Virus record (IMG/VR): IMGVR_UViG_3300042455_001086
Span: 1-64,000 of that record
DNA length: 64,000 nucleotides
Strand: one strand, 5' to 3'
Part shown: one piece after another, positions 37,426 to 58,135 of the stretch
Numbering within the stretch: position 1 is the stretch's first letter
Layout: each line of letters begins with the position of its first letter
Notes under the pieces: model-generated
The model's input: the letters and a program-made list of their open reading frames with translations, nothing else
What the model was told of the DNA's origin: nothing
Database searches by the model: none
Program-made: the position numbers and the translations under genes

Positions 37426-38472
37426 TTATAAAAGTTTTCTTAATATTTTTCTAACACTTTCAAATAATTCCGGATGATAGAGGATTAAGTTCAAATCATC
37501 AAGATTATTAACAGACCTTTTTTCTTGTTGGTTATTTTTCCAAAGTTTAATAATTAGTCTATTTGTTTTTAAATCCAAGGTTTCAAAAATAACCTCAATA
37601 TTTTTTTCCGGAATTTTAATTAATTTGTTAAAACCACCAAGGCTAATTACTTTTTTATATAATTTATTATATTCGTCAAAATTAGTATTTTCACCCATCA
37701 AATCATCTTCAATTGTTTCTAATATATCATCTAAAGCCTTACCTATATTTTTTTGTGTTTCCTCATTATCGTAATCATCACACCAAGAATTATATTCAAG
37801 TTCAGACCAATCCCCAACATTATTATTACCATATTTTTCATATAATAACTTTAATAAACCTTTTAAATCTTCATCTTCAGCGTTTAACATTTTATACAAT
37901 CTTAAAAGAATTCTAACATCAGTTATAAATTTATAGGCAGGTATCAACTCAAAAATACCAAATTTATAAAATGGATTTTTAACATCATTCAATATTTCTT
38001 CTTTAACTGCCCTTCCGATACATTCAGAATGTGTCGTACCATAGTCATATATTAAATTATCAATATGGTTTGAAAACATCTTATCAAGAAATTTGGCAAC
38101 ATTCGATTCATTTTCCTCAATTTCTAAAGTTGGATTTACAAGTTTTACTATTCTTTTAAGTTTTTCAAGATTTATTGGATTGAAGTCTTTAATAATATAC
38201 CCTTCTTTCCAATCATCTTCGTATTTATATCTATCATAATCATCATTATAATACTGACCACCAACAAATCTAGCCCAGGTATATCTATCTGGATTATCAC
38301 GATCAATATCAAAAATCGCTAGAAAGTCATCGTCATCGTCAAATGTTATTGTAATTTTTGGCGTTTTACTACTATAATCAACATACGAAATTAGATCATC
38401 AGGATAATGCCATCTACTAATTTCTTCACCTTTAGCAATTTTTTTTAAAAATTCATAAGTTTCACTTGCCAT
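37426..38472 (-). CDS. Hypothetical acidic protein
   Basis: ORF track. Confidence 0.7.
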   Translation of the reverse strand: MASETYEFLKKIAKGEEISRWHYPDDLISYVDYSSKTPKITITFDDDDDFLAIFDIDRDNPDRYTWARFVGGQYYNDDYDRYKYEDDWKEGYIIKDFNPINLEKLKRIVKLVNPTLEIEENESNVAKFLDKMFSNHIDNLIYDYGTTHSECIGRAVKEEILNDVKNPFYKFGIFELIPAYKFITDVRILLRLYKMLNAEDEDLKGLLKLLYEKYGNNNVGDWSELEYNSWCDDYDNEETQKNIGKALDDILETIEDDLMGENTNFDEYNKLYKKVISLGGFNKLIKIPEKNIEVIFETLDLKTNRLIIKLWKNNQQEKRSVNNLDDLNLILYHPELFESVRKILRKLL

Positions 38473-38523
38473 ATTAGATAAATATAATTATATTTGTATT
38501 TATATATAGTTCTTTGAAAATAT

Positions 38524-38914
38524 GGGGGTGTTTTTGGATTTGACAGGTATTGGCTGAGGAATAAGGGCATGTAGGGACTAAGTTAATCTCTTTAAAAACT
38601 GACTTGGAAAACAACTGGCAATGTGCTAAACAAAATGGAAACTCTTGGATTAGTAAGAGGTTCTGAAGTTACTGTAGCTTAAGATAAGTTCGGAAACGGG
38701 GGGTCGGCAGACATATAACCTAGCAACAGAAGTCGTAGTTTGATAGAGCACACCGGATGGCTCTCTAAATCCGATTCGGGACCATTGGTTGTTGATTTAC
38801 GATGGTGAAGAACAAATCAACTATTTTGGGATATTAGAAAATATCAACCTAAACATGTAGTCCTTATCTGACAGGATATTATGGACCGGAGTTCGACTCT
38901 CCGCACCTCCACCA
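38524..38914 (+). ncRNA. ssrA: tmRNA
   Basis: 5' GGGGGTG..GGATTTGAC; 3' T-arm CGGAGTTCGACTCTCCG and CACCTCCACCA with G3.U70; tag ORF 38617-38682; promoter and boxA upstream. Confidence 0.95.
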
Positions 38915-38977
38915 ATTGTAAAACCTCATCATAAGATGGGGTTTTTTTTATTTAAAATAAAATTGTATATTTGTAGA

Positions 38978-39703
38978 ATGAAAACAATAAAAACATATTT
39001 GACAAATTTACCAAGTGGTGTAAAAACTATTTTTGGAATCAATATTATTGTTTATATTATAAGTTGTATATCGTTATTTTTGTTTTCATTTGATATTAAC
39101 CAACATCTTGGATTTTACCCAACCGATTCTGGAAATTTTGTTATTTATCAGATTCTAACATTTATGTTCACACATTCATATGAACCGACACATATATTTA
39201 TCAATTTAATTTTATTTTTATTTTTTTCTGTTTCATTCGAAAAAAAATTCGGTACAGAAAACTACTACTGGATGTATGTTTTATCAAGTTTAACTTGTGT
39301 GTTGTTTTATAACACTTTGAAAAACCAAGAACTTGATTATTGTAAAAGACAATTAATAAGTAAAGATGTTAATATTTTTTCTGTAAAGTATAGTGATAGA
39401 TTTAAACATCCAAAAGAAGAAAGGGTTTTGATTGAACGGTATTACGATTCTAAATCGTATGGTATTGGTGCTTCGGGGGCTTTATTCGGATTTGTTGGTT
39501 CTTTTTTAGTTTTTAATCTAAGATTTACAAGAAAAATAAGAACAATACTACTATTATGTCTGGCATCATATATGGTCTATAGTAATTTAATTGTTCTCTA
39601 CCCATATGATTATACCTCATCTGGATCCTCAATTGGACATATAGGAGGGCTTATAACTGGATTGATATTTTCAATGTTTCTTAAAATAAAAAAGGAGGTT
39701 TAG
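38978..39703 (+). CDS. Rhomboid intramembrane serine protease
   Basis: YQILTFMFTH..HIFIN, GASG, GHIGG; several TM segments. Confidence 0.9.
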   Translation: MKTIKTYLTNLPSGVKTIFGINIIVYIISCISLFLFSFDINQHLGFYPTDSGNFVIYQILTFMFTHSYEPTHIFINLILFLFFSVSFEKKFGTENYYWMYVLSSLTCVLFYNTLKNQELDYCKRQLISKDVNIFSVKYSDRFKHPKEERVLIERYYDSKSYGIGASGALFGFVGSFLVFNLRFTRKIRTILLLCLASYMVYSNLIVLYPYDYTSSGSSIGHIGGLITGLIFSMFLKIKKEV

Positions 39704-39733: not shown

Positions 39734-40192
39734 TTATCTAAGACCCTGGAATGGTTTTTTTTGTGAAGATTGTTGTGTTCTTCCATGTGCCGAACCTTGA
39801 GCTGAGAGTGTTTTAACTCTTTCTTCTGGGTTAAACTGTTGTAAATGTCTATTTATTTCACTTATAATTTTATTTTGTTTATCAGCAAAACCAAAAACAT
39901 TCATACCATAACTTACTTCTTCCATATCCGTTGAGATGTAAGATCCTATTGTGCTATATCCAAGTTTTTTTACGGCAGCCAAAGCTTCCATATAATCAGC
40001 TTTATTTTTGATCATATATACGGCGTTTAAAACACCTCTCTCATCAGTACCCAAACCAGCTATTCCTTTTTTAATCGCATTAACAGCATTTTGTCCGTTT
40101 CCTTCATTTAGAAGACTTGTATTATTTTCATTAATCACTCTTTTTACAATTCTCACCAAATCTGACTCAGTTAATTTTACTATTTTTTTCAT
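39734..40192 (-). CDS. Protein with LTESDL leader and an annexin-like repeat
   Basis: MKKIVKLTESDLVRIVKRVINE; IKKGIAGLGTDE. Confidence 0.7.
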   Translation of the reverse strand: MKKIVKLTESDLVRIVKRVINENNTSLLNEGNGQNAVNAIKKGIAGLGTDERGVLNAVYMIKNKADYMEALAAVKKLGYSTIGSYISTDMEEVSYGMNVFGFADKQNKIISEINRHLQQFNPEERVKTLSAQGSAHGRTQQSSQKKPFQGLR

Positions 40193-40252
40193 ATTTTAAT
40201 TTTAATTTGATTATTTACAATATAAATATATCGTGAATTGAAAAAGGAATAA

Positions 40253-41812
40253 TTATCCGTAAGTTTCCTCACTTCCTTCCTTATCAGTTGTTCCAACACC
40301 TTTAGTTATTGTTTTAGTCCCGGCTTTAGTTGCCCCTATAATTTTTTCAGCTTTCTCAATCCCAGTTTCAGCTTTTTTAATACCTTTTGCTAACTTTACA
40401 GTTTCTTTTCCGGTTTTTTTAGTTCCTTTTACAGAATGTGTAGCAACAACACCATTCATAATAACATCAAAAGTGTCACAATATGTTTTACCAGCTTGAC
40501 AAATCAAGGGTCTTACATTTTCTGTTGTTGCATTAGAACCAAGTTCAAATATTTTATCTTTAATCCAACTAACAGTTTTTTCATTTAACTTACTCATTAT
40601 ATCTTTACCCAGAACATTTTCAATGGATTGGAATATTGGTCCTAAATTTGTTTTTGCGTATGTTGTAAAATATGCTGTTCCCTTTTGTAGTAATGTTGTT
40701 GTTTTTGGTATTGTTTTGGTTACTACTTTTCCTGCTGTTCCTTTTATTGCATTTACAATCTCATCCAAAAAAGCTGTAATCTTATTTAAAGATCCCAATA
40801 ACATATTACCAAAATTCTTTAGAAAGGATAATTTTGTAATTAACCAATTTACACCTTTTTTAATACCATCAATAACCCACTTTGCACCACCGGCGATTTT
40901 ACCAATAATACTATTAAAAAATTGACTTAATTTTGGGAATTTTTGTGCCATTTTTCCAAAAAAACCAACTGCGGTTTTTTCAGCACCAAGAACTGCTTTA
41001 GTCCCTTGTAGTGGTTTTAAAGAGGTCTGTAATCCAATTCCAGACAATAATAATGAAAATGTGTCTAAAATTGCATCAAAAAAACTACCTTTACCTTTAT
41101 CCATTTGAACAAAATCCCAAGCTGTTAAAGCACCATAAATTAACATATTTGCCGCTTGCCCACCTGGTATAGCGGTTAAAATTAATGTTGCAACAGTTCC
41201 ACCAATACCATTTACAATATCCCTAAATCCTTCCATTATTTGTTCTAAAGATAAACTTCTTAAAGAATCAATTGCTTTATCAGCACCTTTTACTACCATA
41301 CCAACTGGTGTATATCCCACAACCTTTAGTAATACATTTCTATTGGCGCCGGCATAACCCATTTTCTCAAGATTGTTCCAGATATTACCGTATTCACTAT
41401 CAAAATCACTCATTTCCGCATTCAACCAAGACTTTAAATTTGGATATTGTTTCCAACTTGCGATATACTTGTTTAAAGCATCAAGAGTTTCTTTATTCTG
41501 AATTTTTTTGATTGCAGCTAAAGCTACACCCTCATTCGTTCCATCATTATCTTTTAGATCCTTATCACCATCCATATCGAAGGCTTTCATTAATTCACCA
41601 AAAACGGCATAAGCTGTTTTATTAGCACTTGCTTGGATTTTTTGTTTTGCTGCTTGGATTTGTTCTGGTGTTAATTGTTGAGGTTGTGTTTGTTCAAATA
41701 TAGTTTGCTCGGATATTTGAACTTCTTTTTGGTCTTCGATACTTTTATTAATATCAAAATTCATTAAGTAGTTAATTCTATTGACCTCTTCTATTAATAG
41801 GGATTTTTCCAT
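40253..41812 (-). CDS. Putative internal/ejection protein with an annexin-like repeat and hydrophobic helices
   Basis: LIEEVNRI leader; GTNEGVALAAIKKI; Gly/Ala-rich helices. Confidence 0.6.
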   Translation of the reverse strand: MEKSLLIEEVNRINYLMNFDINKSIEDQKEVQISEQTIFEQTQPQQLTPEQIQAAKQKIQASANKTAYAVFGELMKAFDMDGDKDLKDNDGTNEGVALAAIKKIQNKETLDALNKYIASWKQYPNLKSWLNAEMSDFDSEYGNIWNNLEKMGYAGANRNVLLKVVGYTPVGMVVKGADKAIDSLRSLSLEQIMEGFRDIVNGIGGTVATLILTAIPGGQAANMLIYGALTAWDFVQMDKGKGSFFDAILDTFSLLLSGIGLQTSLKPLQGTKAVLGAEKTAVGFFGKMAQKFPKLSQFFNSIIGKIAGGAKWVIDGIKKGVNWLITKLSFLKNFGNMLLGSLNKITAFLDEIVNAIKGTAGKVVTKTIPKTTTLLQKGTAYFTTYAKTNLGPIFQSIENVLGKDIMSKLNEKTVSWIKDKIFELGSNATTENVRPLICQAGKTYCDTFDVIMNGVVATHSVKGTKKTGKETVKLAKGIKKAETGIEKAEKIIGATKAGTKTITKGVGTTDKEGSEETYG

Positions 41813-41910
41813 ATATTATAATATATAAACTATAAATATATGATATATATAAAAAAAGGATAACCAACCGTTATCCCCAATTTTTTTTTAATAAGATCTT
41901 ATATTTTTAA

Positions 41911-42765
41911 AAAAAGCCTGAGATTACAGCTTGGTTTGAGAACCTTTTGAAGGATTATTTTTTCCCTTCGTATCCACCATCTTTTGAATGGTATTTCTCA
42001 GTGACGGTTTTTTAGGTATACCACTCCTTTAGGTTTGAATTACTCTCATCTTACTTGACTCTTTCCGAGGATGCCTCCCCAGTTCGTCCTTGCGGGATTA
42101 AAGGTTTTTCGGATAATTACACATCGACTTGGGATCTTTGTGTGCAATGAACGGCTCATTACTATGTAGTCACCTTTCATCCAAACCTGACGGACACTTT
42201 TCCTTTCTGTAGTTAATAATAGAATCATTACTTTCCATAAAGTATTTGTGTTGTGGATTGTGAAAGTAGTGGTCCGTCAACCAAGCCAACCCATCTTTTG
42301 AACGGATCGATACTTAACTACTCTCTGAAATGTCCCCATTTCCATATTTTTAGACTACTTCAAAACAATTCCCTTGGTAAGGAATAATTAGGGTTGGTAA
42401 CAGCACCATCTGTACACGAACATACCTTTCGGTTTTAAGTATCCTATTATATTGGAACACGCAATAATAAAATTGGATAATTCTATTTTTTGCAATATTC
42501 CTACGAGTTATTCCTATTGGTGTTCCCACCTCAAACTGACAACCCACATTGCCAGTTCATCTAACCACTTTCCCTACAGCGTTGCCCTCGGTACTAAAGG
42601 TTAAACGGTATCCCGCTTGTGTACTCAAGTTCAGTTACCCAAACCGCAAACCATTTACACGAATGATTCACTTTATCCCACTTTCGTGGTTTATTTTATG
42701 GACTATACACGGCCCAATATCTTTATCAGTTTCATTTCTTACTCCTGAAAGGATAATCTAATTTT
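41911..42765 (-). ncRNA. Large (~850 nt) structured ncRNA, probably GOLLD-class
   Basis: No credible ORF; GC richer than its surroundings; TAACTTTG promoter at 42803-42810 and boxA at 42766-42775; many hairpins; 3' hairpin plus U-run. Size and tRNA-proximal phage context fit GOLLD. Family assignment not verified. Confidence 0.65.
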
Positions 42766-42851
42766 TCAAAGAACTTTTTCGGACTTTTCCGAATTTGTTT
42801 TACAAAGTTACGACATTTATTCTAATTTGTCAAGTGCTTTGTGATTATTTT

Positions 42852-43001
42852 TTAATATTTTTCGATATAAAGCTTACCGTTACCATATTTATTTACCATA
42901 ATTTTGGCAAACTCTAAATTAGGTGTATAAACTTTTTGACCTTTATCGTTGATATATCCGTAGATTTCAACTTCAACTAATTCATTTTGTGTTTCACTCA
43001 T
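42852..43001 (-). CDS. 49-aa hypothetical protein
   Basis: Hand-translated MSETQNELVEVEIYGY...YIEKY. Confidence 0.55.
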   Translation of the reverse strand: MSETQNELVEVEIYGYINDKGQKVYTPNLEFAKIMVNKYGNGKLYIEKY

Positions 43002-43061
43002 TTTGTTTGTTTTTTAAATACATTACAAACATATAATAAATATTTGGGTGAGTCAAGAAAA

Positions 43062-43796
43062 TTAAAACATTTTTCTAATTCTTTCTATTTCCTCATTCAG
43101 TTTTGACGATCTTTTTTGCAAACCATTATTTTCATTTAAAGAAAACACCTTACTTATCAATTCTCTATATTTTTCTTTTCTTTGTTCTTCAGGCATATTA
43201 AAAATATCCGAAAGTGAATTGATAATACTATTTTGTTTTGAGGTTCTGTCTATATGTTGTATTTCTTCTTCGTCATCTTTTGTTGGGAAACCGGGTATGT
43301 CGGAAATTGTTAAGTTTGATTCGTCAGGAATGGTTAAATCCTCAATACTTTTTGGTTCTGAACTTGCTCCACTTTTTCTTGATATATGTATGTGATTTTC
43401 GTGATTTGGAAACCCAAAAGTTAAAACGGCTTTATCATTACCTTTTTCGCTATTTTTTTTATAACCCATAGAAACTAAAGTGTCGACAAACTTTTGAATA
43501 GCATCATATATTCCTTTTTGTTTTGCATCTGAAACACCACCAGAAAATCCTTTACCATTAACAATAGCAATATCTACAGCATTTCCAGTTTCGTGTCTTG
43601 TACCCTTTTTGTGTCCAGTGATTGCAGTAGTAATTGTAACCTCCACACCAGCTTTTTTTGCTGCATCACTAACATCTTTTAAAAGTTCTGGATTTATTTT
43701 GTCTTTGGATGGTGTTGCACTACCAACAATATTATCACCAAACATAACATTTGACAATCCAGAAGACTTTACTGATTCACGAATTTTAAATTTCAT
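43062..43796 (-). CDS. Peptidase M15-like peptidoglycan hydrolase
   Basis: ITTAITGH...RHETGNAVDI...HENHIHIS. Start taken at MKFKIRES behind ATATTTAT. Confidence 0.7.
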   Translation of the reverse strand: MKFKIRESVKSSGLSNVMFGDNIVGSATPSKDKINPELLKDVSDAAKKAGVEVTITTAITGHKKGTRHETGNAVDIAIVNGKGFSGGVSDAKQKGIYDAIQKFVDTLVSMGYKKNSEKGNDKAVLTFGFPNHENHIHISRKSGASSEPKSIEDLTIPDESNLTISDIPGFPTKDDEEEIQHIDRTSKQNSIINSLSDIFNMPEEQRKEKYRELISKVFSLNENNGLQKRSSKLNEEIERIRKMF

Positions 43797-43797
43797 A

Positions 43798-44268
43798 TTA
43801 TATAAATATGAACCAATCTGGAATTTGTCTATTTTTCCATCTTGCAAAATCTTTTTTTGCTCTCATATAATAATTTCTATAAGATTTAATAACATCATTA
43901 CCAATTTTAAATTCATCACCCATTGCTAGTGGTGGTGTTGTAAAATTAATATCGTTAATATTTGGTTTATTGGTTAAACACCATTCAATTACATCCTGTG
44001 ATTTATGTCTTTTACCATATCGGTAGGTATATTCTTTACAGAGTTCCAAACCTAAATCACACAAATAAAGATAATTTGATAATGATTCTCTAACCCAAAT
44101 AGAACAAGGGTGATTTTTGTGGGATAATTTATATGGGGCTTCAGAACCTAAAACCCAATGAGAACCACATAATAATTGTGCTGATTCAACTATTAGCTTA
44201 CAAACATGCTTATCACAATGGTATTGAGCACATTTTTTTGTGTCAAAATCAAGGAAAAATATATTCAT
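43798..44268 (-). CDS. Pyrimidine-dimer DNA glycosylase (DenV-like) family protein
   Basis: MNIFFLD..AQYHCDKHV.K...E.AQLL, HKNHPC..W, EYTYRYGK.H. Confidence 0.8.
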   Translation of the reverse strand: MNIFFLDFDTKKCAQYHCDKHVCKLIVESAQLLCGSHWVLGSEAPYKLSHKNHPCSIWVRESLSNYLYLCDLGLELCKEYTYRYGKRHKSQDVIEWCLTNKPNINDINFTTPPLAMGDEFKIGNDVIKSYRNYYMRAKKDFARWKNRQIPDWFIFI

Positions 44269-44308
44269 ACCACAAAGATATAAAATAATATATTAACTAG
44301 AAAAAAAA

Positions 44309-44920
44309 TTATTGTGATAAATGATTCATTAAAACACCACCCAAAGATGTTGCATGCACTTGTAGATGATTTATCGATTCCATATCAAGTTTTGTTTTTC
44401 TTTTTGTAAAATCAATACCCAAAGTTCCGATAAATTTATCATCAATAGTTTTAATTGCAAATAAATAACCGGATTTACAACCAGTATCTTCGGCAATATA
44501 TTTTAATCCATAAGTTGCAATTGATTCATCTTTATAATCAGGAATTTCAATTACATCATTCCGATATAGTTGATTAATTGATTTTGAAAATAGATTTACC
44601 GGAATGTTATAAAAATTTGATTGCACTGAAGATATACCAAGACCTACAGTTTCATAAATAATTGAAAACTTTGCCATAGATTTTCCTGTTGGATAAAAAT
44701 TACCACCATTATGAAATTGTGTTACCCAAACTCTATCAGCATTAAATTCATCTTTTATATGTTCTATTCTTGAATTTATTAACTCGCTCACACGAAGTGT
44801 GTCTGTAACCATATCTGGTTTTTGTTTTCTTTTGTCCAAAAAATTTTTTAAAAAAATAACCGATAAAGGACCCAAAATACCGGTTATAAATGCAATTGTT
44901 ATTTCTACCCAATTCTCCAT
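44309..44920 (-). CDS. N-terminal TM plus GAF-like domain protein (T4 gp t-like holin candidate)
   Basis: Single TM; ADRVWVTQFHNGG...IGTLGIDF. Confidence 0.55.
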   Translation of the reverse strand: MENWVEITIAFITGILGPLSVIFLKNFLDKRKQKPDMVTDTLRVSELINSRIEHIKDEFNADRVWVTQFHNGGNFYPTGKSMAKFSIIYETVGLGISSVQSNFYNIPVNLFSKSINQLYRNDVIEIPDYKDESIATYGLKYIAEDTGCKSGYLFAIKTIDDKFIGTLGIDFTKRKTKLDMESINHLQVHATSLGGVLMNHLSQ

Positions 44921-45002
44921 TCACATAAATTTACTTAATAAATATATTGTAATATTAAAAAACCCCACCTAAAAAGATGGGGTTTATAAAATTTTGTTAA
45001 AA

Positions 45003-45789: not shown

Positions 45790-46200
45790 TCATAATTTAT
45801 CTGTATTTTCCAAAAGTTCTTTTGCAATCATAGATACTGTTTTATTATCAACAAGTCCTTTATAGTTTTTATTAAACTCACCCATAATCTGTCCGAGATT
45901 GGTCAATCCACTCATTATATATGTGGTAACCTTTTCACGGATTAGATTTTCACTCATCATTTGTGGTAAATATGGTTTAATATATTCCAATTCTTTTAAA
46001 GATTCCGGTGTATTAGTTTGTGTTAAAGATTTTTCCATTTTCTTTAATATACCTAATACCACATCATCAGATGCAATACCTGATCTTCCTTCTTCGTTTT
46101 GGATTTCACCCTTAACAACTCCAAGGAAGTTTTTCTTTTCCATTTCTTTGTTCTTAAATGCTGACATAAAATCGGCATTTATTTGTTCTTTTAATGTCAT
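45790..46200 (-). CDS. GatB/YqeY-domain protein
   Basis: MTLKEQINADFMSAFKNKE...YLPQMMSE...GQIMG. Confidence 0.85.
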   Translation of the reverse strand: MTLKEQINADFMSAFKNKEMEKKNFLGVVKGEIQNEEGRSGIASDDVVLGILKKMEKSLTQTNTPESLKELEYIKPYLPQMMSENLIREKVTTYIMSGLTNLGQIMGEFNKNYKGLVDNKTVSMIAKELLENTDKL

Positions 46201-46988: not shown

Positions 46989-47004
46989 ATAACTTTTATT
47001 TTTG

Positions 47005-47079
47005 CCGTCAGGAGTGGATTCGAACCACTTACCGATTCAGATTTGAGTACTGTCCGCTCTGCCATTGAGCTACCTGACT
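47005..47079 (-). ncRNA. Aberrant tRNA, anticodon unresolved
   Basis: Normal D and T arms; 3-bp anticodon stem with a 9-nt loop UACUCAAAU. Confidence 0.55.
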
Positions 47080-47990: not shown

Positions 47991-48153
47991 AATAATGTTG
48001 ATAGTGTTGGTGTACCCGCCTATTTCCAATCTTAACTGCCTTTTTAAGTTTTATGGTGCACCGGCAGTGGGCCATATCTATCCTTAACCTACGTAGTTTG
48101 TCGACAACTTCCGTAGAGGCGATCACTATCAATTTTTTCAAAGAACTTTCTTT

Positions 48154-48362: not shown

Positions 48363-48648
48363 GTTTAAGATGAGTCGTGGACTTGTGTACCACTTGTCCC
48401 CCTTTAAGTTTCTCACTAACCCCGGATGTAGGGAAACTCACCTTATTTGTCTTACAAAGATATGTATTTTATTTCAATCTACCAAATCTTTTTTTAATTT
48501 TTGTTGAGGATTAATCCTAAATTTTTTCTTTAAGGCCCTTAATAAATCAGTTTTTATGTTAGTTTTAACAAATTTAACCCTTCCTGATTCACAAGTCCCT
48601 GATAAAACTTCCTTCATCATTCATTGTTTTTAATTGTTTATTTTTTGA

Positions 48649-48725
48649 ACTACCCATAGGACTCGAACCTACAACCTTCGGGCCGAAGTAGACCCGTGTG
48701 CAAACCAAATTTACACCATAAGTAG
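48649..48725 (-). ncRNA. tRNA-like RNA with an 8-nt anticodon loop
   Basis: CGGGT-CTACTTCG-GCCCG; intact D and T arms. Confidence 0.6.
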
Positions 48726-48819
48726 TTACGCAAGAAGACAGACAGGAATTAGTGTCGACAAATTTCCTTAGGCTATATGACCCATCTTCTTGTTAGGTTC
48801 GGTTAATTACTCCGAACTT

Positions 48820-50194: not shown

Positions 50195-50409
50195 AAGTTG
50201 TGACAACTTTGGGTTGGTTGTCACATTTACGTGAATGAGGGGATCAATCCTACTAACATCACGGGTATAAGTTCGTCACATCAAACTATTACCAAAAACA
50301 ACGTCAGTTTTTATCCGACAAAACTGATTAAACGACCTGATCTCTTGTTACCCCCCTTTTAAGTGCGTGAACTCCTTCTCAAGTTGAACTCTACTGTATA
50401 CACTCCCAG

Positions 50410-50483
50410 TACCGAAGACGGGACTCGAACCCATAACCTTGACGATATAAGCGTCCTGCTCTCACCAATTGAGCTACGTCGGC
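50410..50483 (-). tRNA. tRNA-Ile(UAU)
   Basis: GACG-CTTATAT-CGTC. Confidence 0.85.
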
Positions 50484-50488
50484 ATAGT

Positions 50489-51115
50489 TTATTTTTTTCT
50501 TCTGTAAACCTCACCTTTATAGTGTTTATCAACAAATCTTTTTACTTGTGAATGTGTTAAACCTAAAATATCAGATACTTTTTTTACCCACCCATACGTT
50601 GTCATATCAACACCTTTAATTAAATCTAACCTTTCACTAACAATATCTTCAGTCAATTTATTAAAACCACCGAATTTATCACCCATTTTTTTTGCATTAT
50701 TAATTCTAAATTCTAAAGGTACCGATTCCCAAGTTTTTTTTCTTTTTTCTTTGTTATCCCACGAGCCGGCAATACTTCCATATTTTAATCCGTGTAACCG
50801 TCTTTTTTCTTCTGTCCAATAATTTTTATTTACATGATCAAAAGAACCTAAACCACCCAAAGAAATGTTATATGTGTTTTTATTAGTTACAAAACTTTCA
50901 TTAACTATTTCACTTTCCATCTGAAACATTTGTGTTGGGTTGTCGAATATTGCTAAATATTTTTTATCAAAGTTATTAATCCCGTATTTTTTAATAGCAT
51001 CTTTTATGTTTTTTCCAGAACCCATATACCCATCGTTAATATTATCAGTTTTATGTACACCAACATAAATCTTACCATTAACTTTATTTCTTATTTCATA
51101 AACTATGTATTTCAT
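50489..51115 (-). CDS. GIY-YIG homing endonuclease (Seg-like)
   Basis: YIVYEIRNKVNGKIYVGVH...YMGSG...E...YNISLGG. Confidence 0.88.
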   Translation of the reverse strand: MKYIVYEIRNKVNGKIYVGVHKTDNINDGYMGSGKNIKDAIKKYGINNFDKKYLAIFDNPTQMFQMESEIVNESFVTNKNTYNISLGGLGSFDHVNKNYWTEEKRRLHGLKYGSIAGSWDNKEKRKKTWESVPLEFRINNAKKMGDKFGGFNKLTEDIVSERLDLIKGVDMTTYGWVKKVSDILGLTHSQVKRFVDKHYKGEVYRRKK

Positions 51116-51378
51116 TTTGAACCTCCGTTTATATATAAATATAACGATAGTTCAAAAAATGTCAGTCTTTCCTGACCGTCACCCCTAACCCACAGGTATG
51201 AACCCGTATTGTAGTAAAGCTTGGTTAGCTATAAAGTAAGGATGAACACGGGCCTAGCAAGCCATCTTTCAGGAAAGGCCCTTCCACCTATTCATCCTAT
51301 TATTAAAAGTTTCGTTAAAAAGGTTTAGAAAACATACTTTTTTACAAAACCAAGATATTTATATATACACTTTTTAAT

Positions 51379-52062
51379 ATGAAAACACTATTCACAGAAG
51401 AAGAATATAAAAATTCAAAATCAACATCTAAATTACCTTGTGAATGTTTACTATGTAAAAAATCATTTCTTGTTGAAAAAAAACTAATAACTTATGAATT
51501 AAAAAATAATCGTAATCGTCATATCTATTGTTCTACCGAATGTTATTATAATGCTCAAAAAGTATTACCAATAATTTTTAAATGTAAAAATTGTAATTGT
51601 GAGTTTGACAGAAAAGAATCCTCAAATAAAAAAGATTCTTCTGGTAACTATTTTTGTTCTCAATCGTGTTCGACCACATTTAATAATAAAAACAAAACAC
51701 ACGGAAATCGACGCTCTAAACTTGAAATTTGGTTGGAGGACCAATTAAAAGTTATTTATCCCAACCTTCCAATCGACTTTAATAAAAAAGAAGTTATCGG
51801 TTCTGAATTAGACATTTATTTCCCAACACTTAATTTTGCAGTAGAATTAAATGGTATTTTTCATTATGAACCTATCTATGGTATAGATAAGTTAAATAAA
51901 ATCCAAGAAAACGACCAATCTAAAACTAAACTTTGTCACGATTTAAAAATAGACCTCTGTATTATTGATGTTTCGGAACAAAAATATGTCAAACCCTCAA
52001 CATCAAAAAAATACCTTGATATTATCACCAATATTGTCAATGAACGTTTGTTAATCTCTTAG
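51379..52062 (+). CDS. Zn-finger PD-(D/E)XK endonuclease, antisense to the tRNA operon
   Basis: CxxC/FCS..C; RSKLE..ELDIY..AVELNGIFH. Confidence 0.75.
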   Translation: MKTLFTEEEYKNSKSTSKLPCECLLCKKSFLVEKKLITYELKNNRNRHIYCSTECYYNAQKVLPIIFKCKNCNCEFDRKESSNKKDSSGNYFCSQSCSTTFNNKNKTHGNRRSKLEIWLEDQLKVIYPNLPIDFNKKEVIGSELDIYFPTLNFAVELNGIFHYEPIYGIDKLNKIQENDQSKTKLCHDLKIDLCIIDVSEQKYVKPSTSKKYLDIITNIVNERLLIS

Positions 52063-52118
52063 CCGGCTTTACCCGTTTCCAACAATCACCTCGTGGCGGT
52101 GGATTAACTCCGATTGTT

Positions 52119-52190
52119 TAGCGTGTTGTGGACTCGAACCACCCCGTAGACGTTATGAGCGTCCCATGCAACCAATTACACCTTCACGCG
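52119..52190 (-). tRNA. tRNA-Met(CAU), initiator-like
   Basis: C1xU72 mismatch; GGACG-CTCATAA-CGTCT; lacks the three consecutive G-C pairs. Confidence 0.75.
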
Positions 52191-52195
52191 ATATG

Positions 52196-52302
52196 TAGTC
52201 AAAGAAGGATTCGAACCTATCACGAGATAAGTGTGAAATTCACCTTATCCCAAGGACTTTTGAGTATTGTGTCCCAGCGTCTACCAATTCCGCCACTTGA
52301 CT
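52196..52302 (-). ncRNA. Leu(CAA)-like tRNA with a 13-nt anticodon loop and extended V-arm
   Basis: GGGAC-ACAATACTCAAAA-GTCCT. Confidence 0.6.
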
Positions 52303-52525
52303 GTTTTTTGTAGTTTAGTAGTTAGATTAAACTCTCGTTTCACTATCTTAATCTAACAGGTTGATACACTTAACGAGTTTCCCGTTTCTTACAACCACAA
52401 TATTTCTAATTTCAATGAACTTCCTTCCTTTTTCTGGAGGTGGGGTTACCATCCCTAACTTCCCCACCTCCGTTGTTTGTTTTACAAAGATATGAAGAAT
52501 TTTTTAATCTACCAAATCTTTTTTG

Positions 52526-52817
52526 TACTTGGAGCGGGAATCGAACCCGCACGGGCAAATGCCCACAGGATTTTCTTACCACTATAGTTTTCACTACCAA
52601 CCAAATTGTTGTTTGTGGTCTGGACTATACCTTAACCTTATCTTTTTAGACTTAGGTTCTCCGTGTCTAGTCTCTACACCTTACTCATTTCTGAGTCTTG
52701 GCTCGGTATTCCCATTTTAAAAGGTTCACCGAATTTACGGAGTTCTACTCAGAGGGTTTCCACTCTGGCACTCAAATTATATAAGTCCGGCGTGTCTACC
52801 TATTCCACCACCCAAGC
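52526..52817 (-). tRNA. tRNA-Leu(UAA) interrupted by a group I intron
   Basis: Exon 1 ends GGACTT and exon 2 begins AAAATCC; long V-arm. Confidence 0.92.
52575..52782 (-). mobile_element. Group I intron (IC3-like, 208 nt) at U^AA
   Basis: AAATTCGGTGAA (P), AATACCGAGC (Q), GTAGAGACTAGAC (R), GTATAGTCC (S), terminal G. Confidence 0.92.
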
Positions 52818-52900
52818 ATTTTACCAATATGTCAAAGAACCTTTGTCTTTTGTTTTACAAATATAAAAACTTTTTTTCAATTACACAATACCCTTAAACG

Positions 52901-52929
52901 AAAAAACCCCTCTTTTTTGGAGAGGGGTT
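52901..52929 (-). terminator. Attenuator terminator A
   Basis: AACCCCTCT/AGAGGGGTT stem plus U-tract. Confidence 0.85.
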
Positions 52930-52955
52930 CATTTTAATTTTGTATGTATAAAATA

Positions 52956-53024
52956 TTACACCCTCTTCTTAAAAGTTGCCTCAGCTAAATCGCCCCCTAT
53001 CAATAATATGTGTAAATTTTTCAT
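52956..53024 (-). CDS. Leader peptide A (22 aa) of tRNA operon A
   Basis: MKNLHILLIGGDLAEATFKKRV; follows ATATTTAT and precedes a terminator. Confidence 0.75.
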   Translation of the reverse strand: MKNLHILLIGGDLAEATFKKRV

Positions 53025-53091
53025 TTGCGGTTTTATTTGTTTTGTTATAAATATATGATACTTTTTAAAAGTGTCAAGTTATTTAATTATT

Positions 53092-53598
53092 TTAATCTTC
53101 AATACTATCAAGTAATTCCACAACAGCATCTACTGATTTTTCTAACGCCTTTAAATTTCTTATTGTTACATCATCTTCTACCAAATCTTCTAAATCCCTA
53201 ACTTTATCATAAGCAGATTCCAAGTCATTTAATATTTCATTAAGATCTATATCGTAATCTTCAAAATCACTTTTATGAAGTTTAACATCTTTTTCTTTAT
53301 AAGATTTAACTAATTGTTTAATAGTGCTTAATGTTTTTTTCATTTTAATAAAATCATCCATCAACCCTTCAGCAACTTTATATTGACTATGTTCAAAAGA
53401 ATCGCCTTTTATCATTGTTTTTAATTTACCAAATGCGATCATCATTCTACCAATACCATTGAATAATCCCATAGTAATGTTGTTTGCGGTTTTTCTGACT
53501 TTCAAATCTTTTTTTACACTTTCATAACCACCTTCGTTGATTACTCTTTTAACAATTCTTGTTAAATCTGATTCTGTTAATCTTATTACTTTTTTCAT
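53092..53598 (-). CDS. LTESDL-leader protein
   Basis: MKKVIRLTESDLTRIVKRVINE. Confidence 0.7.
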   Translation of the reverse strand: MKKVIRLTESDLTRIVKRVINEGGYESVKKDLKVRKTANNITMGLFNGIGRMMIAFGKLKTMIKGDSFEHSQYKVAEGLMDDFIKMKKTLSTIKQLVKSYKEKDVKLHKSDFEDYDIDLNEILNDLESAYDKVRDLEDLVEDDVTIRNLKALEKSVDAVVELLDSIED

Positions 53599-53767
53599 AA
53601 TGTTATTTAATTATTTTATTATTAAGTTTCCCCAAATGTTAATCATTTTTTTAATTTCATCTTCAGTATAAATATCAAATACTGGTAAATTTTTCATTTC
53701 TTTTTATTTATAATAAATATTCAACTTTTCAATTATTAATGTATTTATTGGTTAAATACATAATATT

Positions 53768-54277
53768 GTGAAACGAACAATAAGACTAACCGAATCTGAA
53801 TTAATTAATGTAATTCAACGAGTAATTGAAGAATCAAAAGGTGGAAATTTGATGGAAGATGTCAGACTTTTATTTGTCACAATGAATCTTTTTATTCCTT
53901 TAATTGAAAAAGATGGAAAAAAATCATTAGATTACAATGGTGAGATTAAATTTTCTATACCAAAAACTAAAATGGAACAAGACCCTAAAAAAACTGGTTC
54001 GTGGTGGGACGGAAAAAAAGTTAAAAACCTAAGTATTGACATCGCTGGTGATGAGAAATATATGATATTAAAAGAACTTACAAACGACACTAATCAAATT
54101 TCTGGTGTTGGTCCTAGGGTTAGTGAAATTGTTAGACCAAACTCAAATGGTTCATCTGCTCTTTTTGGTTTAATAGGTAAACAAATTGATGGTACAAAAA
54201 ACAAACGTACACAAGTTAATTTTAATGATGGTCTAGTATATGGTGTCGTTAATTTTATAGCAAAACCAACCCAGTAA
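53768..54277 (+). CDS. LTESEL-leader protein
   Basis: MKRTIRLTESELINVIQRVIEE (GTG start). Confidence 0.7.
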   Translation: MKRTIRLTESELINVIQRVIEESKGGNLMEDVRLLFVTMNLFIPLIEKDGKKSLDYNGEIKFSIPKTKMEQDPKKTGSWWDGKKVKNLSIDIAGDEKYMILKELTNDTNQISGVGPRVSEIVRPNSNGSSALFGLIGKQIDGTKNKRTQVNFNDGLVYGVVNFIAKPTQ

Positions 54278-54700
54278 CTAGGATGGTTTTATTATTTCAA
54301 AATTTGTCATAACATTTATTTCCGTTAATGAAGAATAAAAAACATAACGTGTAACGGATTCGTTTTTAATATCGGTGTTTACAATCAACCCATAATCAAA
54401 TCCCTCCTCCAAGATTTCAATTTGAAATTGTGTTTGGTTTAATTTAATTATATTGATAGGTAAAACTGAAACAAGTTTGCCGTTTCTGTAAAATGAGGAT
54501 GTTTTTTCATCAAAATCAATAAGATATTGAGTGTTTACAACATCATTTGACACCAAAGAAGAATTCTCTAATAAAACTTTAAGATTTTTTGACTCAGAAT
54601 ATGAGTAAAAGGTGTTTGATTCCTGAATTTTTATTATCAATTTTTGTGAGAATGAAAATGTCGAAATAAGTAAACCAACTAAAAGAATTAAATTTTTCAT
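54278..54700 (-). CDS. Secreted hypothetical protein
   Basis: Signal peptide ending SFSQ; host-type promoter at 54730. Confidence 0.65.
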   Translation of the reverse strand: MKNLILLVGLLISTFSFSQKLIIKIQESNTFYSYSESKNLKVLLENSSLVSNDVVNTQYLIDFDEKTSSFYRNGKLVSVLPINIIKLNQTQFQIEILEEGFDYGLIVNTDIKNESVTRYVFYSSLTEINVMTNFEIIKPS

Positions 54701-54782
54701 AAATTTTGTTTTTATATTAGTTATATCAACAAAGATATGTACTTTATTTTAATCTGCCAAATTTTTTTCAAACTTTTTTTTG

Positions 54783-58119: not shown

Positions 58120-58135
58120 AATATGTCAAAGAACT
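58120..58135 (-). promoter_or_regulatory. rrn-type boxA (AGTTCTTTGACATATT); also at 38508(+), 42766, 48138, 52037, 52412, 52832
   Basis: GTTC(T/A)TTGA occurs ahead of RNA genes. Confidence 0.75.

What the first reader, a model, noticed from the sequence alone, without database searches (positions are those of the whole stretch)
41911..42810. Giant ncRNA with its own promoter and boxA
An ~850-nt ORF-free, structured region transcribed like an rRNA operon (TAACTTTG promoter, boxA). The 5' AGAUUAU and an internal CUGAGA are each complementary to the 3' hairpin loop GUAAUCUCAG. It is probably GOLLD-related, a family of unknown function, or a new large RNA.
Basis: partly seen in the sequence, partly recalled or inferred. 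Interest (0 to 1): 0.7.

Follow-up and report, generated by a model that had tools for sequence, protein, structure and literature searches.

The report
Phage GOLLD RNA with boxA leader
The region is a full-length, highly expressed copy of the known giant phage RNA "GOLLD" in a 257-kb freshwater jumbo phage; what is new is that it starts with the same promoter-hairpin-boxA leader that its presumed Bacteroidota hosts use for ribosomal RNA.

Summary
The ~900-nt ORF-poor region is a full-length GOLLD RNA gene on the minus strand of a complete 257-kb freshwater jumbo phage. Rfam's GOLLD model, which covers only the 3' domain, matches 42325-41915 at 321.6 bits (cut-off 150). The other ~400 nt are the 5' domain of the env-38 type (env-38 is the GOLLD solved by cryo-EM). 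This domain is conserved in 45 non-redundant viral loci, and 77 of 104 predicted pairs show compensatory changes. Five lake metatranscriptomes hold the RNA at contig depths of hundreds to tens of thousands, with essentially none on the flanking genes.

TTG-N20-TAACTTTG is conserved in homologues. GTTCTTTGA is invariant in 33/33 leaders, also precedes this phage's tmRNA and lies in its tRNA arrays, and is the exact 9-mer in 11 of 20 Bacteroidota 16S leaders sampled. The leader is missing from the abundant RNA and from the cryo-EM construct, so it is probably trimmed.

The two proposed pairings with the 3' loop L27 are not supported. AGAUUAU belongs to an accessory hairpin that some homologues lack. 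CUGAGA is one strand of a covarying local helix; only YUG:CAG is constant.

Verdict: known family, new member. The rRNA-type leader is a modest new observation.

The parts
42831..42833 (-). -33 element TTG of a Bacteroidota-type promoter
   Evidence: Read. TT invariant and TTG in most of 33 aligned homologous leaders. It lies 20 nt upstream of the -7 box.
42803..42810 (-). -7 element TAACTTTG (TAnnTTTG consensus). The transcription start is inferred at about 42797-42795.
   Evidence: TA and TTTG are conserved in the 33-sequence leader alignment. The same TAnnTTTG box stands upstream of Bacteroidota 16S genes. The start site itself was not mapped.
42778..42793 (-). Leader hairpin UUCGGAAAAGUCCGAA (boxB-like position, purine-rich tetraloop)
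   Evidence: The stem varies with compensating changes or insertions in homologues (UCAGG...CCUGA, AUCG...CGAU, GAGAAA...UUUCUC). It is absent in a few. Host rRNA leaders likewise have hairpins 2-10 nt before boxA.
42766..42774 (-). boxA-like element GTTCTTTGA (continues as AAAA to 42762)
   Evidence: Invariant in 33/33 GOLLD leaders. It occurs 138 times in 1.36 Mb of related viral DNA, against about 21 for permuted 9-mers. Of those, 80 are upstream of GOLLD cores and 19 upstream of tRNA/tmRNA on the same strand, with none in antisense. The exact 9-mer stands 85-217 nt upstream of 16S in 11 of 20 Bacteroidota genomes.
42716..42757 (-). Accessory hairpin: AUUAUC (42757-42752) pairs with GAUAUU (42721-42716) around a hypervariable insert.
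   Evidence: The 3' partner is GAUAAU in 11, GAUAUU in 6 and GAUAGU in 3 homologues. The boxA-to-core distance is 44-104 nt when the hairpin is present and 11-13 nt in 8 homologues that lack it.
42326..42715 (-). GOLLD 5' domain (env-38 type, the 'cap' of the cage), not covered by the Rfam model
   Evidence: Shares 70-90% identity with more than 100 viral loci. RNAalifold on 45 sequences gives 104 pairs, 77 with compensatory changes. 97% of cells pair, against 36-40% when partners are slid and 82% when shuffled. It begins at the same GGCCG...UAUrGUC...GGAUAAAGUG sequence as the env-38 cryo-EM construct.
41915..42325 (-). GOLLD conserved 3' domain (the 'ring' of the cage), full Rfam model 1-416
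   Evidence: RF02032, 321.6 bits, gathering score 150, E 2.6e-91. It is the only copy in the 257-kb genome.
42191..42260 (-). A/U-rich variable linker inside the 3' domain (the disordered interior loop in the env-38 cage). No tRNA is inserted here.
   Evidence: Aligned to the unpaired model positions ~64-136. It is poorly conserved in alignment A1. RNA contig depth from relatives dips at 42207-42243. The linker is described in PMC12286853.
41937..42000 (-). Local helix UGAGAA (42000-41995): UUCUCA (41942-41937) enclosing two hairpins.
   Evidence: Paired in the Rfam consensus structure. It covaries across lineages (GAUUGG:UCAAUC, GUUAGA:UCUAAC, GACAAG:CUUGUC) while L27 is constant.
41916..41930 (-). 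Terminal hairpin P27/L27 (stem GCU:GGC, loop GUAAUCUCA), followed by U7 (41915-41909)
   Evidence: alignment. L27 is a hub of tertiary contacts in the env-38 structure. The U-run is common but not universal in homologues.
41856..41878 (-). Intrinsic-terminator-like hairpin (9-bp stem) plus T-run, between GOLLD and the next gene
   Evidence: No RNA contig depth at or beyond it.
38509..38517 (+). Second copy of GTTCTTTGA with its own TTG/TAtaTTTG promoter, 6 nt before the phage tmRNA (38524-38914)
48138..48146 (-). GTTCTTTGA within the tRNA array, directly 3' of tRNA-Asp
52832..52840 (-). GTTCTTTGA behind a TAtaTTTG promoter, in front of a tRNA-like sequence
58126..58134 (-). GTTCTTTGA between tRNA-Thr and tRNA-Gln

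Best explanation
This is the GOLLD RNA gene of a lytic-type jumbo phage of a freshwater Bacteroidota host.

Shown:
- The 3' 411 nt match the GOLLD covariance model.
- The 5' ~390 nt are the env-38-type 5' domain, with strong covariation.
- The RNA is very abundant in lake metatranscriptomes, while the neighbouring genes are not detected.
- A Bacteroidota-type promoter, a small hairpin and the 9-mer GTTCTTTGA precede the RNA. The 9-mer is invariant in homologues, is shared with the phage's tmRNA and tRNA units, and is identical to the boxA of Bacteroidota rRNA leaders.

Inferred:
- Host RNA polymerase starts at about 42797.
- The nascent boxA recruits host NusB-S10 and the other Nus factors, as on rRNA operons. 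The polymerase can then cross ~0.9 kb of untranslated, highly structured RNA without Rho-dependent termination, and co-transcriptional folding is assisted.
- Transcription ends at the U-run after L27 or at the hairpin terminator at 41878-41856.
- The leader is trimmed off, leaving a roughly 800-840-nt RNA.

By homology with env-38: the 5' 'cap' domain and 3' 'ring' domain, joined around a ~70-nt floppy linker, self-assemble into an RNA-only 14-mer cage.

Most likely role (speculative): a container or scaffold acting on the translation apparatus during infection (tRNAs or ribosomes). This fits its place in a module with a tmRNA and 24 tRNAs.
For: - Identity: (RF02032, 321.6 bits); same 5' start as, and collinear with, the env-38 construct.
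- Structure: (77 of 104 pairs compensatory; 97% paired against about 38% when slid). (z = -4.3).
- Transcription: (depth of hundreds to about 29,000 within 41930-42724 in five RNA runs, essentially 0 in flanks; several contigs with 0 differences).
- Promoter and leader: (conserved boxes, GTTCTTTGA 33/33). (same motif at the tmRNA and in the tRNA arrays). (138 occurrences against about 21 expected; 99 directly upstream of stable-RNA genes, none antisense). (more cases: tRNA-boxA-GOLLD, tmRNAs). (the same 9-mer after TAnnTTTG promoters and hairpins in 16S leaders).
- Leader trimmed or dispensable: (no contig over 42725-42797 in any run). (the cryo-EM construct that forms the 14-mer starts at the core).
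- Phage and host: (257 kb, inverted terminal repeats, 100% complete). (nearest database relatives are huge phages predicted to infect Bacteroidetes).
- Cage and context: PMC12286853 and PMC12990946.
Against: - No experiment or read-level data show the transcription start, the strand, or Nus-factor binding. The contigs are unstranded and lose transcript ends, so the 5' end is only bracketed, at about 42724-42765.
- The missing leader coverage could partly reflect sequence variability among the mixed GOLLD population.
- GOLLD genes of phiCbK, PegLeg and PG07 (other host phyla) show no boxA-like motif by my pattern, so the leader is lineage-specific.
- The host was not identified directly.
- Cage formation and any cargo are extrapolated from env-38, not tested for this sequence.
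- The biological function of GOLLD remains unknown in the literature.
Confidence: 0.85

Rival explanations
1. GTTCTTTGA is not a Nus-factor boxA here. Instead it could be a phage-specific signal shared by the phage's stable RNAs, for example a processing site for leader removal, a binding site for a phage protein, or a promoter-proximal element. On this view its identity with the host rRNA motif reflects shared processing, not antitermination.
For: The leader is absent from the abundant RNA, so a cleavage must occur near it. At the tmRNA the motif ends only 6 nt before the mature 5' end. Inside tRNA arrays it sits between tRNAs, where processing sites are expected. No binding data exist.
Against: The exact 9-mer is the dominant motif in Bacteroidota 16S leaders, at the position where boxA lies in other bacteria, and is preceded by hairpins. 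From my own knowledge, it also matches the general bacterial boxA consensus (GYUCUUUrA). Processing sites of tRNA and tmRNA (RNase P) need no such motif.
Confidence: 0.25
2. GOLLD here has no promoter of its own and is made by read-through or processing of a long stable-RNA transcript coming from the upstream tRNA array, as in phages where GOLLD directly follows a tRNA.
For: In several homologous loci (L004, L046, L102, L109; Vibrio phage PG07) GOLLD follows a tRNA with no intervening promoter. All genes from 61 kb down to GOLLD are on the minus strand.
Against: About 2.6 kb of protein-coding ORFs separate the last tRNA (45454) from GOLLD, and they have essentially no RNA contig depth. A well-spaced TTG/TAACTTTG promoter, conserved in most of the 33 aligned leaders, stands 6-8 nt before the leader.
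Confidence: 0.07
3. The region is a new large RNA unrelated to GOLLD, or it encodes small proteins (ORFs 42046-42228(-) 60 aa, 42350-42547(-) 65 aa, 42549-42761(+) 70 aa).
For: Only that the Rfam model covers half of the region and that short ORFs exist.
Against: The full GOLLD model matches at twice the gathering score. The uncovered half is the known env-38 5' domain. Substitutions preserve base pairs, not reading frames.
Confidence: 0.01
4. In the cell the RNA does not act as a closed cage. It might instead act as a monomeric or partly assembled factor, for example a decoy or sponge for a host defence nuclease or for ribosomes, or a storage form for tRNA-like cargo.
For: The function is unknown. 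The literature mentions ribosome pull-down and tRNAs embedded in some GOLLD linkers. phiCbK has a tRNA-Gly inside its GOLLD.
Against: env-38 and Sag GOLLD assemble at nanomolar concentrations without protein. The window's RNA keeps both domains and L27. This linker carries no tRNA.
Confidence: 0.2

Closest known systems
GOLLD RNA env-38 (marine/lake metagenome; cryo-EM 14-mer, PDB 9MEE; Kretsch et al. 2025, PMC12286853)
   Same: Same two-domain architecture and same order of conserved blocks from the GGCCG core to L27. Similar length: about 802 nt of core, against 831 nt. A/U-rich internal linker. Encoded by a phage next to tRNAs.
   Different: The window's gene is seen in its genomic context, with its own promoter, hairpin and boxA leader and an accessory hairpin. 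None of these is in the env-38 construct. L27 is GUAAUCUCA, against GUAUUCUCA in env-38. The local helix strand is CUGAGAA, against UUGGUUGU. One 5'-domain hairpin is shorter (AACCGAAAGGU, against an extended GGGGAAACCCC hairpin). Oligomeric state was not tested.
GOLLD RNAs of Lactobacillales and other phages (Sag GOLLD 12-mer; phiCbK, PegLeg, PG07)
   Same: Conserved 3' domain (RF02032). The neighbourhood holds tRNAs, and in PegLeg also a tmRNA.
   Different: Their 5' domains are of other types. No env-38-type core start and no GTTCTTTGA-like motif was found upstream. Some carry a tRNA in the linker (phiCbK).
rRNA operon leader (boxB-boxA) and the NusB-S10 antitermination complex
   Same: Promoter, then hairpin, then boxA within the first ~35 nt of the transcript. 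The 9-mer is identical to that of 11 of 20 sampled Bacteroidota 16S leaders. The product is a long untranslated structured RNA from which the leader is removed.
   Different: The transcript is a phage RNA of unknown function, not rRNA. No second boxA or leader-trailer helix was identified. Binding of Nus factors was not tested.
ROOL RNA (the other phage-associated RNA nanocage)
   Same: Large phage or prophage RNA near tRNA arrays that forms RNA-only cages. Four gut ROOL sequences in the published alignment begin with UGUUCUUUGA.
   Different: Unrelated sequence and fold. There is no ROOL match in the window at Rfam gathering thresholds.

Membership tests
GOLLD RNA (Rfam RF02032) | Conserved 3' domain matching the family covariance model above its gathering score | tested here: met
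   321.6 bits against 150, E 2.6e-91, model positions 1-416 of 416, no truncation.
GOLLD RNA (Rfam RF02032) | Separate, less conserved multi-hairpin 5' domain upstream of the 3' domain | tested here: met
   About 390 nt with 104 predicted pairs, 77 compensatory, in 45 sequences. Same start as, and collinear with, the env-38 5' domain (compared by eye, not by a tool alignment).
GOLLD RNA (Rfam RF02032) | Variable unstructured linker within the 3' region | tested here: met
   42260-42191 aligns to the unpaired, low-confidence model columns and is poorly conserved.
GOLLD RNA (Rfam RF02032) | Conserved 3'-terminal loop L27 (GUAaUCUCA) | tested here: met
   GUAAUCUCA at 41927-41919.
GOLLD RNA (Rfam RF02032) | Encoded by a phage or prophage, usually beside tRNA genes | tested here: met
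   Complete 257-kb virus record. 24 tRNAs and a tmRNA lie within 20 kb.
GOLLD RNA (Rfam RF02032) | Self-assembly into an RNA-only homo-oligomeric cage (14-mer for the env-38 type) | not testable with these tools
   Known for env-38 and Sag GOLLD. Inferred here by homology only.
GOLLD RNA (Rfam RF02032) | Expressed, with rising levels during phage lytic growth | tested here: inconclusive
   Abundant in five lake metatranscriptomes with silent flanks. The timing relative to infection cannot be read from metagenomes.
rRNA-type (Nus factor, boxA) antitermination leader | boxA sequence matching that of the host's rRNA leaders | tested here: met
   GTTCTTTGA is the exact 9-mer in 11 of 20 Bacteroidota 16S leaders; the others carry variants with 1-2 mismatches. 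It is invariant in 33/33 GOLLD leaders. The host phylum is inferred from the promoter type and from related phages.
rRNA-type (Nus factor, boxA) antitermination leader | Located in the transcribed leader shortly after the promoter, with a preceding hairpin | tested here: met
   The promoter -7 box ends at 42803, the hairpin spans 42793-42778 and boxA spans 42774-42766. Host leaders have the same layout.
rRNA-type (Nus factor, boxA) antitermination leader | Bound by NusB-S10 and conferring resistance to Rho-dependent termination | not testable with these tools
The complex-prediction tool gives no verdict for RNA partners, so it was not used.
ROOL and OLE RNAs | Match to the family covariance model | tested here: not met
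   No ROOL or OLE match anywhere in the window at gathering thresholds.

The most novel reading that the evidence does not exclude
In Bacteroidota jumbo phages the GOLLD cage RNA, the phage tmRNA and the tRNA arrays may form one 'stable-RNA regulon'. Its transcripts all carry an exact copy of the host rRNA boxA, so the phage would borrow the host's rRNA antitermination/chaperone complex (NusB-S10 and partners). That complex would be needed to transcribe the RNA and to fold it co-transcriptionally so that it can assemble into the 14-mer cage. No such link between GOLLD and Nus-factor antitermination was found in the searchable literature.
Probability: 0.4. Interest if true: 0.55.

Novelty: new member of a known kind. 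Interest (0 to 1): 0.4.

Why it matters
GOLLD is one of the largest bacterial or phage non-coding RNAs. It is now known to build RNA-only cages larger than a ribosome, and its function is still unknown. This copy adds little to what the RNA is, but it adds to how and where it is made:

- It sits in a complete jumbo-phage genome.
- It is among the most abundant phage transcripts in several lake metatranscriptomes.
- It carries a conserved promoter-hairpin-boxA leader, shared with the phage's tmRNA and tRNA units and identical to the host phylum's rRNA leader.

If the leader works as on rRNA operons, it would explain how a 0.9-kb untranslated RNA escapes Rho. It would also suggest that correct cage assembly in vivo depends on the Nus machinery. 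This is a concrete handle for expressing and studying GOLLD in a Bacteroidota host. It also gives a simple sequence tag (TAnnTTTG ... GTTCTTTGA) for finding further stable RNAs in such phages. One unannotated candidate turned up this way in related loci.

Tried and rejected
- The original GOLLD paper (Weinberg 2009; DOI and PMC4140389) is not held. I therefore could not check whether a promoter or boxA was noted there. Searches for GOLLD with boxA or antitermination returned only unrelated plant papers.
- Relatives cannot be drawn for a virus record. I reached Bacteroidota genomes through loci from a pattern scan instead.
- The genome contigs pattern TTTG-N(5-35)-GTTCTTTGAAA was too loose. Most of its 120 hits are chance matches in all phyla, and only 2 lay within 1.5 kb of a 16S start. 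The 16S-centred sampling replaced it.
- I looked for a boxA-like motif upstream of GOLLD in phages of Caulobacter, Mycobacterium and Vibrio and found none. The leader is therefore not a general GOLLD feature.
- The 5' AGAUUAU: L27 pairing is rejected. The CUGAGA: L27 pairing is reduced to a possible 3-bp YUG:CAG contact.
- Labels such as L27 and L21a do not occur in the paper's supplementary tables. The published GOLLD alignment covers only the 3' domain. I therefore did not map the individual inter-subunit bridges, and I did not align env-38 with a tool because it has no reference and cannot be pasted. The collinearity was judged by eye.
- A single-sequence fold of the leader alone is not better than shuffles (z = -0.7). 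The leader's support is comparative, not thermodynamic.
- Complex prediction was not used, because it gives no verdict for RNA.
Full report
WHAT IS THERE. The window is the first 64 kb of a 257,166-bp IMG/VR virus record with inverted terminal repeats, rated 100% complete. Its G+C content is about 30%. Between ORFs 40253-41812(-) and 42852-43001(-) lies about 1 kb with only chance ORFs of 70 aa or fewer. An Rfam scan of the whole window gives one outstanding hit: GOLLD (RF02032) at 42325-41915 on the minus strand, 321.6 bits against a gathering score of 150, E 2.6e-91, covering all 416 model positions. It is the only copy in the genome. The same scan finds a tmRNA (38524-38914, +) and about 20 tRNAs. 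ARAGORN finds 24 tRNAs between 45.4 and 61 kb, all on the minus strand. This is the usual setting of GOLLD, a phage genome beside tRNA genes (PMC12286853; PMC12990946).

THE HALF THAT RFAM DOES NOT COVER. The Rfam model describes only the universally conserved 3' domain. A pattern from the 3' end retrieved about 120 viral contigs. Nearly all of them also share the upstream ~475 nt with the window at 70-90% identity. For 45 non-redundant sequences, RNAalifold predicts 104 pairs in 42732-42326, and 77 of them have at least one sequence changed on both sides with the pair kept. In my own control, 97% of cells form standard pairs, against 36-40% when the 3' partners are slid by 1-3 columns and 82% when they are shuffled within columns. 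Covarying pairs number 77, against 21-34 when slid and at most 59 when shuffled. The whole 883-nt RNA folds with z = -4.3. The construct used for the cryo-EM structure of GOLLD env-38 begins AUGGCCGCUAUGGUCGUCAAAUAAAUACGAAAGUAGGAUAAAGUGG (supplement of PMC12286853). The window reads UUGGGCCGUGUAUAGUCCAUAAAAUAAACCACGAAAGUGGGAUAAAGUG from about 42717. The later conserved blocks follow in the same order. The region is therefore a full-length GOLLD of the env-38 type: a 5' 'cap' domain (42715-42326), a 3' 'ring' domain (42325-41915), and a ~70-nt A/U-rich linker (42260-42191) that carries no tRNA here.

TRANSCRIPTION. Six freshwater metatranscriptome runs hold about a third of the sampled words of the region. 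I laid four of them on 40000-45000. Their contigs cover only 41837-42838, at summed word depths of up to about 283 in one run and hundreds to about 11,500 in the other three. The flanking genes show zero or depths below 1.5. That flank serves as the silent control against DNA carry-over. At finer resolution, in a set of four runs that includes a fifth run, depth starts in the bin 41911-41947 and ends in the bin 42688-42724, reaching about 29,000. Nothing lies over 42725-42900 or over 41800-41910 in any run. Many contigs are 88-99% identical, reflecting a population of related GOLLDs. Several are identical to the window, for example 42152-42274, which spans the variable linker. Contigs carry no strand and lose transcript ends, so the ends are only bracketed.

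PROMOTER AND LEADER. On the minus strand the sequence reads TTG (42833-42831), 20 nt, TAACTTTG (42810-42803), about 6 nt, the hairpin UUCGGAAAAGUCCGAA (42793-42778), AAA, GTTCTTTGA (42774-42766). In an alignment of 33 homologous leaders:
- The TTG and TAnnTTTG boxes are conserved.
- The hairpin keeps its loop while its stem changes by compensating substitutions or extra pairs, and it is sometimes missing.
- GTTCTTTGA is invariant in all 33, although the sequence on both sides varies. This invariance is not built in by my retrieval pattern, which lay at the other end of the RNA.

In the phage's own genome the 9-mer occurs on the sense strand at five places next to stable RNAs:
- 6 nt before the tmRNA, behind its own TTG/TAtaTTTG promoter.
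- Before GOLLD.
- At three places in the tRNA arrays (48146, 52840, 58134).
Only two other occurrences exist in 257 kb. Across 1.36 Mb of related viral loci it occurs 138 times, against a mean of 21 for 40 permuted 9-mers. Of these, 80 lie within 200 nt upstream of a GOLLD core and 19 lie within 150 nt upstream of a tRNA or tmRNA on the same strand. None lies there in antisense, and only 1.3% of permuted-motif matches do. Many of the remaining 39 are further stable-RNA leaders: tRNA-boxA-GOLLD, uncalled tmRNAs, and an unannotated element.

IS IT boxA? I sampled 16S leaders from 20 Bacteroidota genomes drawn across the phylum. Eleven have exactly GTTCTTTGA 85-217 nt upstream of the 27F site, and most others have variants with one or two mismatches such as GTTCATTAA, GTTCATAGA or GTTCTTTGG. 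In these leaders the motif follows TAnnTTTG promoters, and hairpins stand 2-10 nt before it. This is the layout seen before GOLLD. The nearest database relatives of the region are two uncultured phages of 635 and 642 kb. That it binds NusB-S10 and confers antitermination here is an inference from the established role of boxA on rRNA operons (for example PMC3177189 and PMC4807359, listed). I found no paper that links GOLLD with boxA or antitermination, and the original 2009 paper could not be read. The leader is not general to GOLLD. Phages of Caulobacter, Mycobacterium and Vibrio show no such motif, and their 5' domains are of other types.

LEADER FATE. The env-38 construct that forms the 14-mer starts at the core and lacks any leader. 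No RNA contig covers 42725-42797, even though close relatives have nearly the same leader sequence. The simplest reading is that the hairpin-boxA leader acts during transcription and is then removed, as in rRNA. Allowing for the loss of about 30-40 nt at contig ends, which is also seen at the 3' end, the mature 5' end lies somewhere between 42765 and 42716.

THE TWO PROPOSED PAIRINGS WITH THE 3' LOOP. L27 is GUAAUCUCA (41927-41919), closed by GCU:GGC.
(a) 5' AGAUUAU (42759-42753). The conserved part is AUUAUC. It pairs with GAUAAU (11 sequences), GAUAUU (6) or GAUAGU (3) immediately before the core, closing a hypervariable insert. The three bases before it vary. Eight homologues lack the whole hairpin (11-13 nt from boxA to core) yet keep L27. 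A conserved 5'-L27 pairing is therefore rejected.
(b) Internal CUGAGA (42001-41996). Rfam pairs UGAGAA with UUCUCA (41942-41937). Across 53 sequences this helix covaries (GAUUGG:UCAAUC, GUUAGA:UCUAAC, GACAAG:CUUGUC, UAAGAA:UUCUUA) while L27 does not change. [quoted passage not shown] The six-base complementarity in the window arises because the 3' strand of the local helix happens to resemble L27. env-38 has UUGGUUGU at that place. One caveat: L27 was fixed by my retrieval pattern, so its invariance in my set is by construction. It is, however, also upper-case (highly conserved) in the Rfam consensus.

HOW IT MOST LIKELY WORKS.
- Shown: identity, structure conservation, high steady-state level, conserved promoter and leader, and identity of the 9-mer with host rRNA boxA.
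- Inferred: host RNA polymerase with the primary sigma factor starts at about 42797. The nascent boxA, with the preceding hairpin, loads NusB-S10 and partners. The modified polymerase transcribes about 0.9 kb of untranslated RNA without Rho-dependent termination and aids its folding. Transcription stops at the U-run after L27 (41915-41909) or at the strong hairpin terminator 41878-41856, and the downstream gene shows no RNA. The leader is trimmed.
- By homology: the RNA assembles into a 14-mer cage like env-38.
- Speculative: the cage acts on the translation apparatus (tRNAs or ribosomes). This is suggested by its membership in a module with a tmRNA, 24 tRNAs and YqeY-like proteins, and by the literature's cargo hypotheses.

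VERDICT. Novelty is low for the RNA itself: it is a new member of a known family, of the structurally solved type. The conserved rRNA-type leader shared by GOLLD, tmRNA and tRNA units of these Bacteroidota phages, and the evidence that it is removed, are modest but apparently unreported additions that suggest direct experiments.

Noticed in passing
window 52050-52190 (-): A sub-threshold HDV-like ribozyme hit (RF02682, 29.4 bits, gathering score 44, E 0.013) at 52050-52118 lies directly 3' of a weak tRNA hit at 52119-52190 (25.1 bits, gathering score 29). From memory, this recalls the HDV-like 'theta' ribozymes found just after phage tRNAs.
   Followed up: no
window 52700-52870 (-): A TAtaTTTG promoter plus GTTCTTTGA (52840-52832) precedes a tRNA-like D-arm (GGTGGAATAGGTAGACAC) that neither ARAGORN nor Rfam called. 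The 4.3-kb gap in the tRNA array (50483-54782) has a G+C peak of 0.39 at 52-53 kb and a 17-nt tmRNA-like fragment at 52534-52550.
   Followed up: partly
L014:3380-3630(-), L015:2426-2865(-), L027:3159-3598(+), L086:3335-3774(+) and about 8 further loci: An unannotated element of about 120-150 nt (…CAGUCUAGGUCCGUAGGGCUACUG…GGAAAGUGACUACGGGAC, with or without a 31-nt insert, …UCCUUCGCAUUUAAAGUG…) has its own TTG/TAnnTTTG promoter, hairpin and boxA. It sits immediately upstream of the GOLLD promoter in related phages. It has no Rfam match at E<=0.01 and is absent from the window's genome. It is a candidate undescribed phage small RNA.
   Followed up: partly
window 38460-38914 (+): The phage tmRNA (110 bits) has its own Bacteroidota-type promoter and a GTTCTTTGA ending 6 nt before its mature 5' end. 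The same arrangement occurs in L060 and L108. A rhomboid-domain protein gene follows at 38936-39703.
   Followed up: partly
window 47004-47079, 48647-48726, 50409-50483 (-): ARAGORN reports unusual tRNAs: 'Ser' with anticodon ACT, one with a four-base anticodon call (ACTT), and Ile with anticodon TAT. Rfam scores the first only 38.6 bits. They may be suppressor, frameshift or degenerate tRNAs.
   Followed up: no
Supplementary file 5 of PMC12286853 (ROOL alignment): Four human-gut ROOL sequences begin with UGUUCUUUGAUAUG. The other phage cage RNA may therefore also carry a boxA-type leader in some lineages.
   Followed up: no
L249 (Caulobacter phage phiCbK 102638-102709) and L250 (Mycobacterium phage PegLeg): phiCbK has an annotated tRNA-Gly inside the span of its GOLLD 3' domain. 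PegLeg has tmRNA, two tRNA-Asn, GOLLD and tRNA-Gln in a row, the same tmRNA + tRNA + GOLLD module as in the window.
   Followed up: no
window 42852-43001 (-) and 45790-46200 (-), 40253-41812 (-): The 49-aa ORF just upstream of the GOLLD promoter is conserved in the closest relatives (L114, L060, L009; alignment). A YqeY-like (GatB/Yqey domain) protein is encoded at 45790-46200, and the N-terminus of the 519-aa protein downstream of GOLLD has a weak YqeY hit.
   Followed up: no
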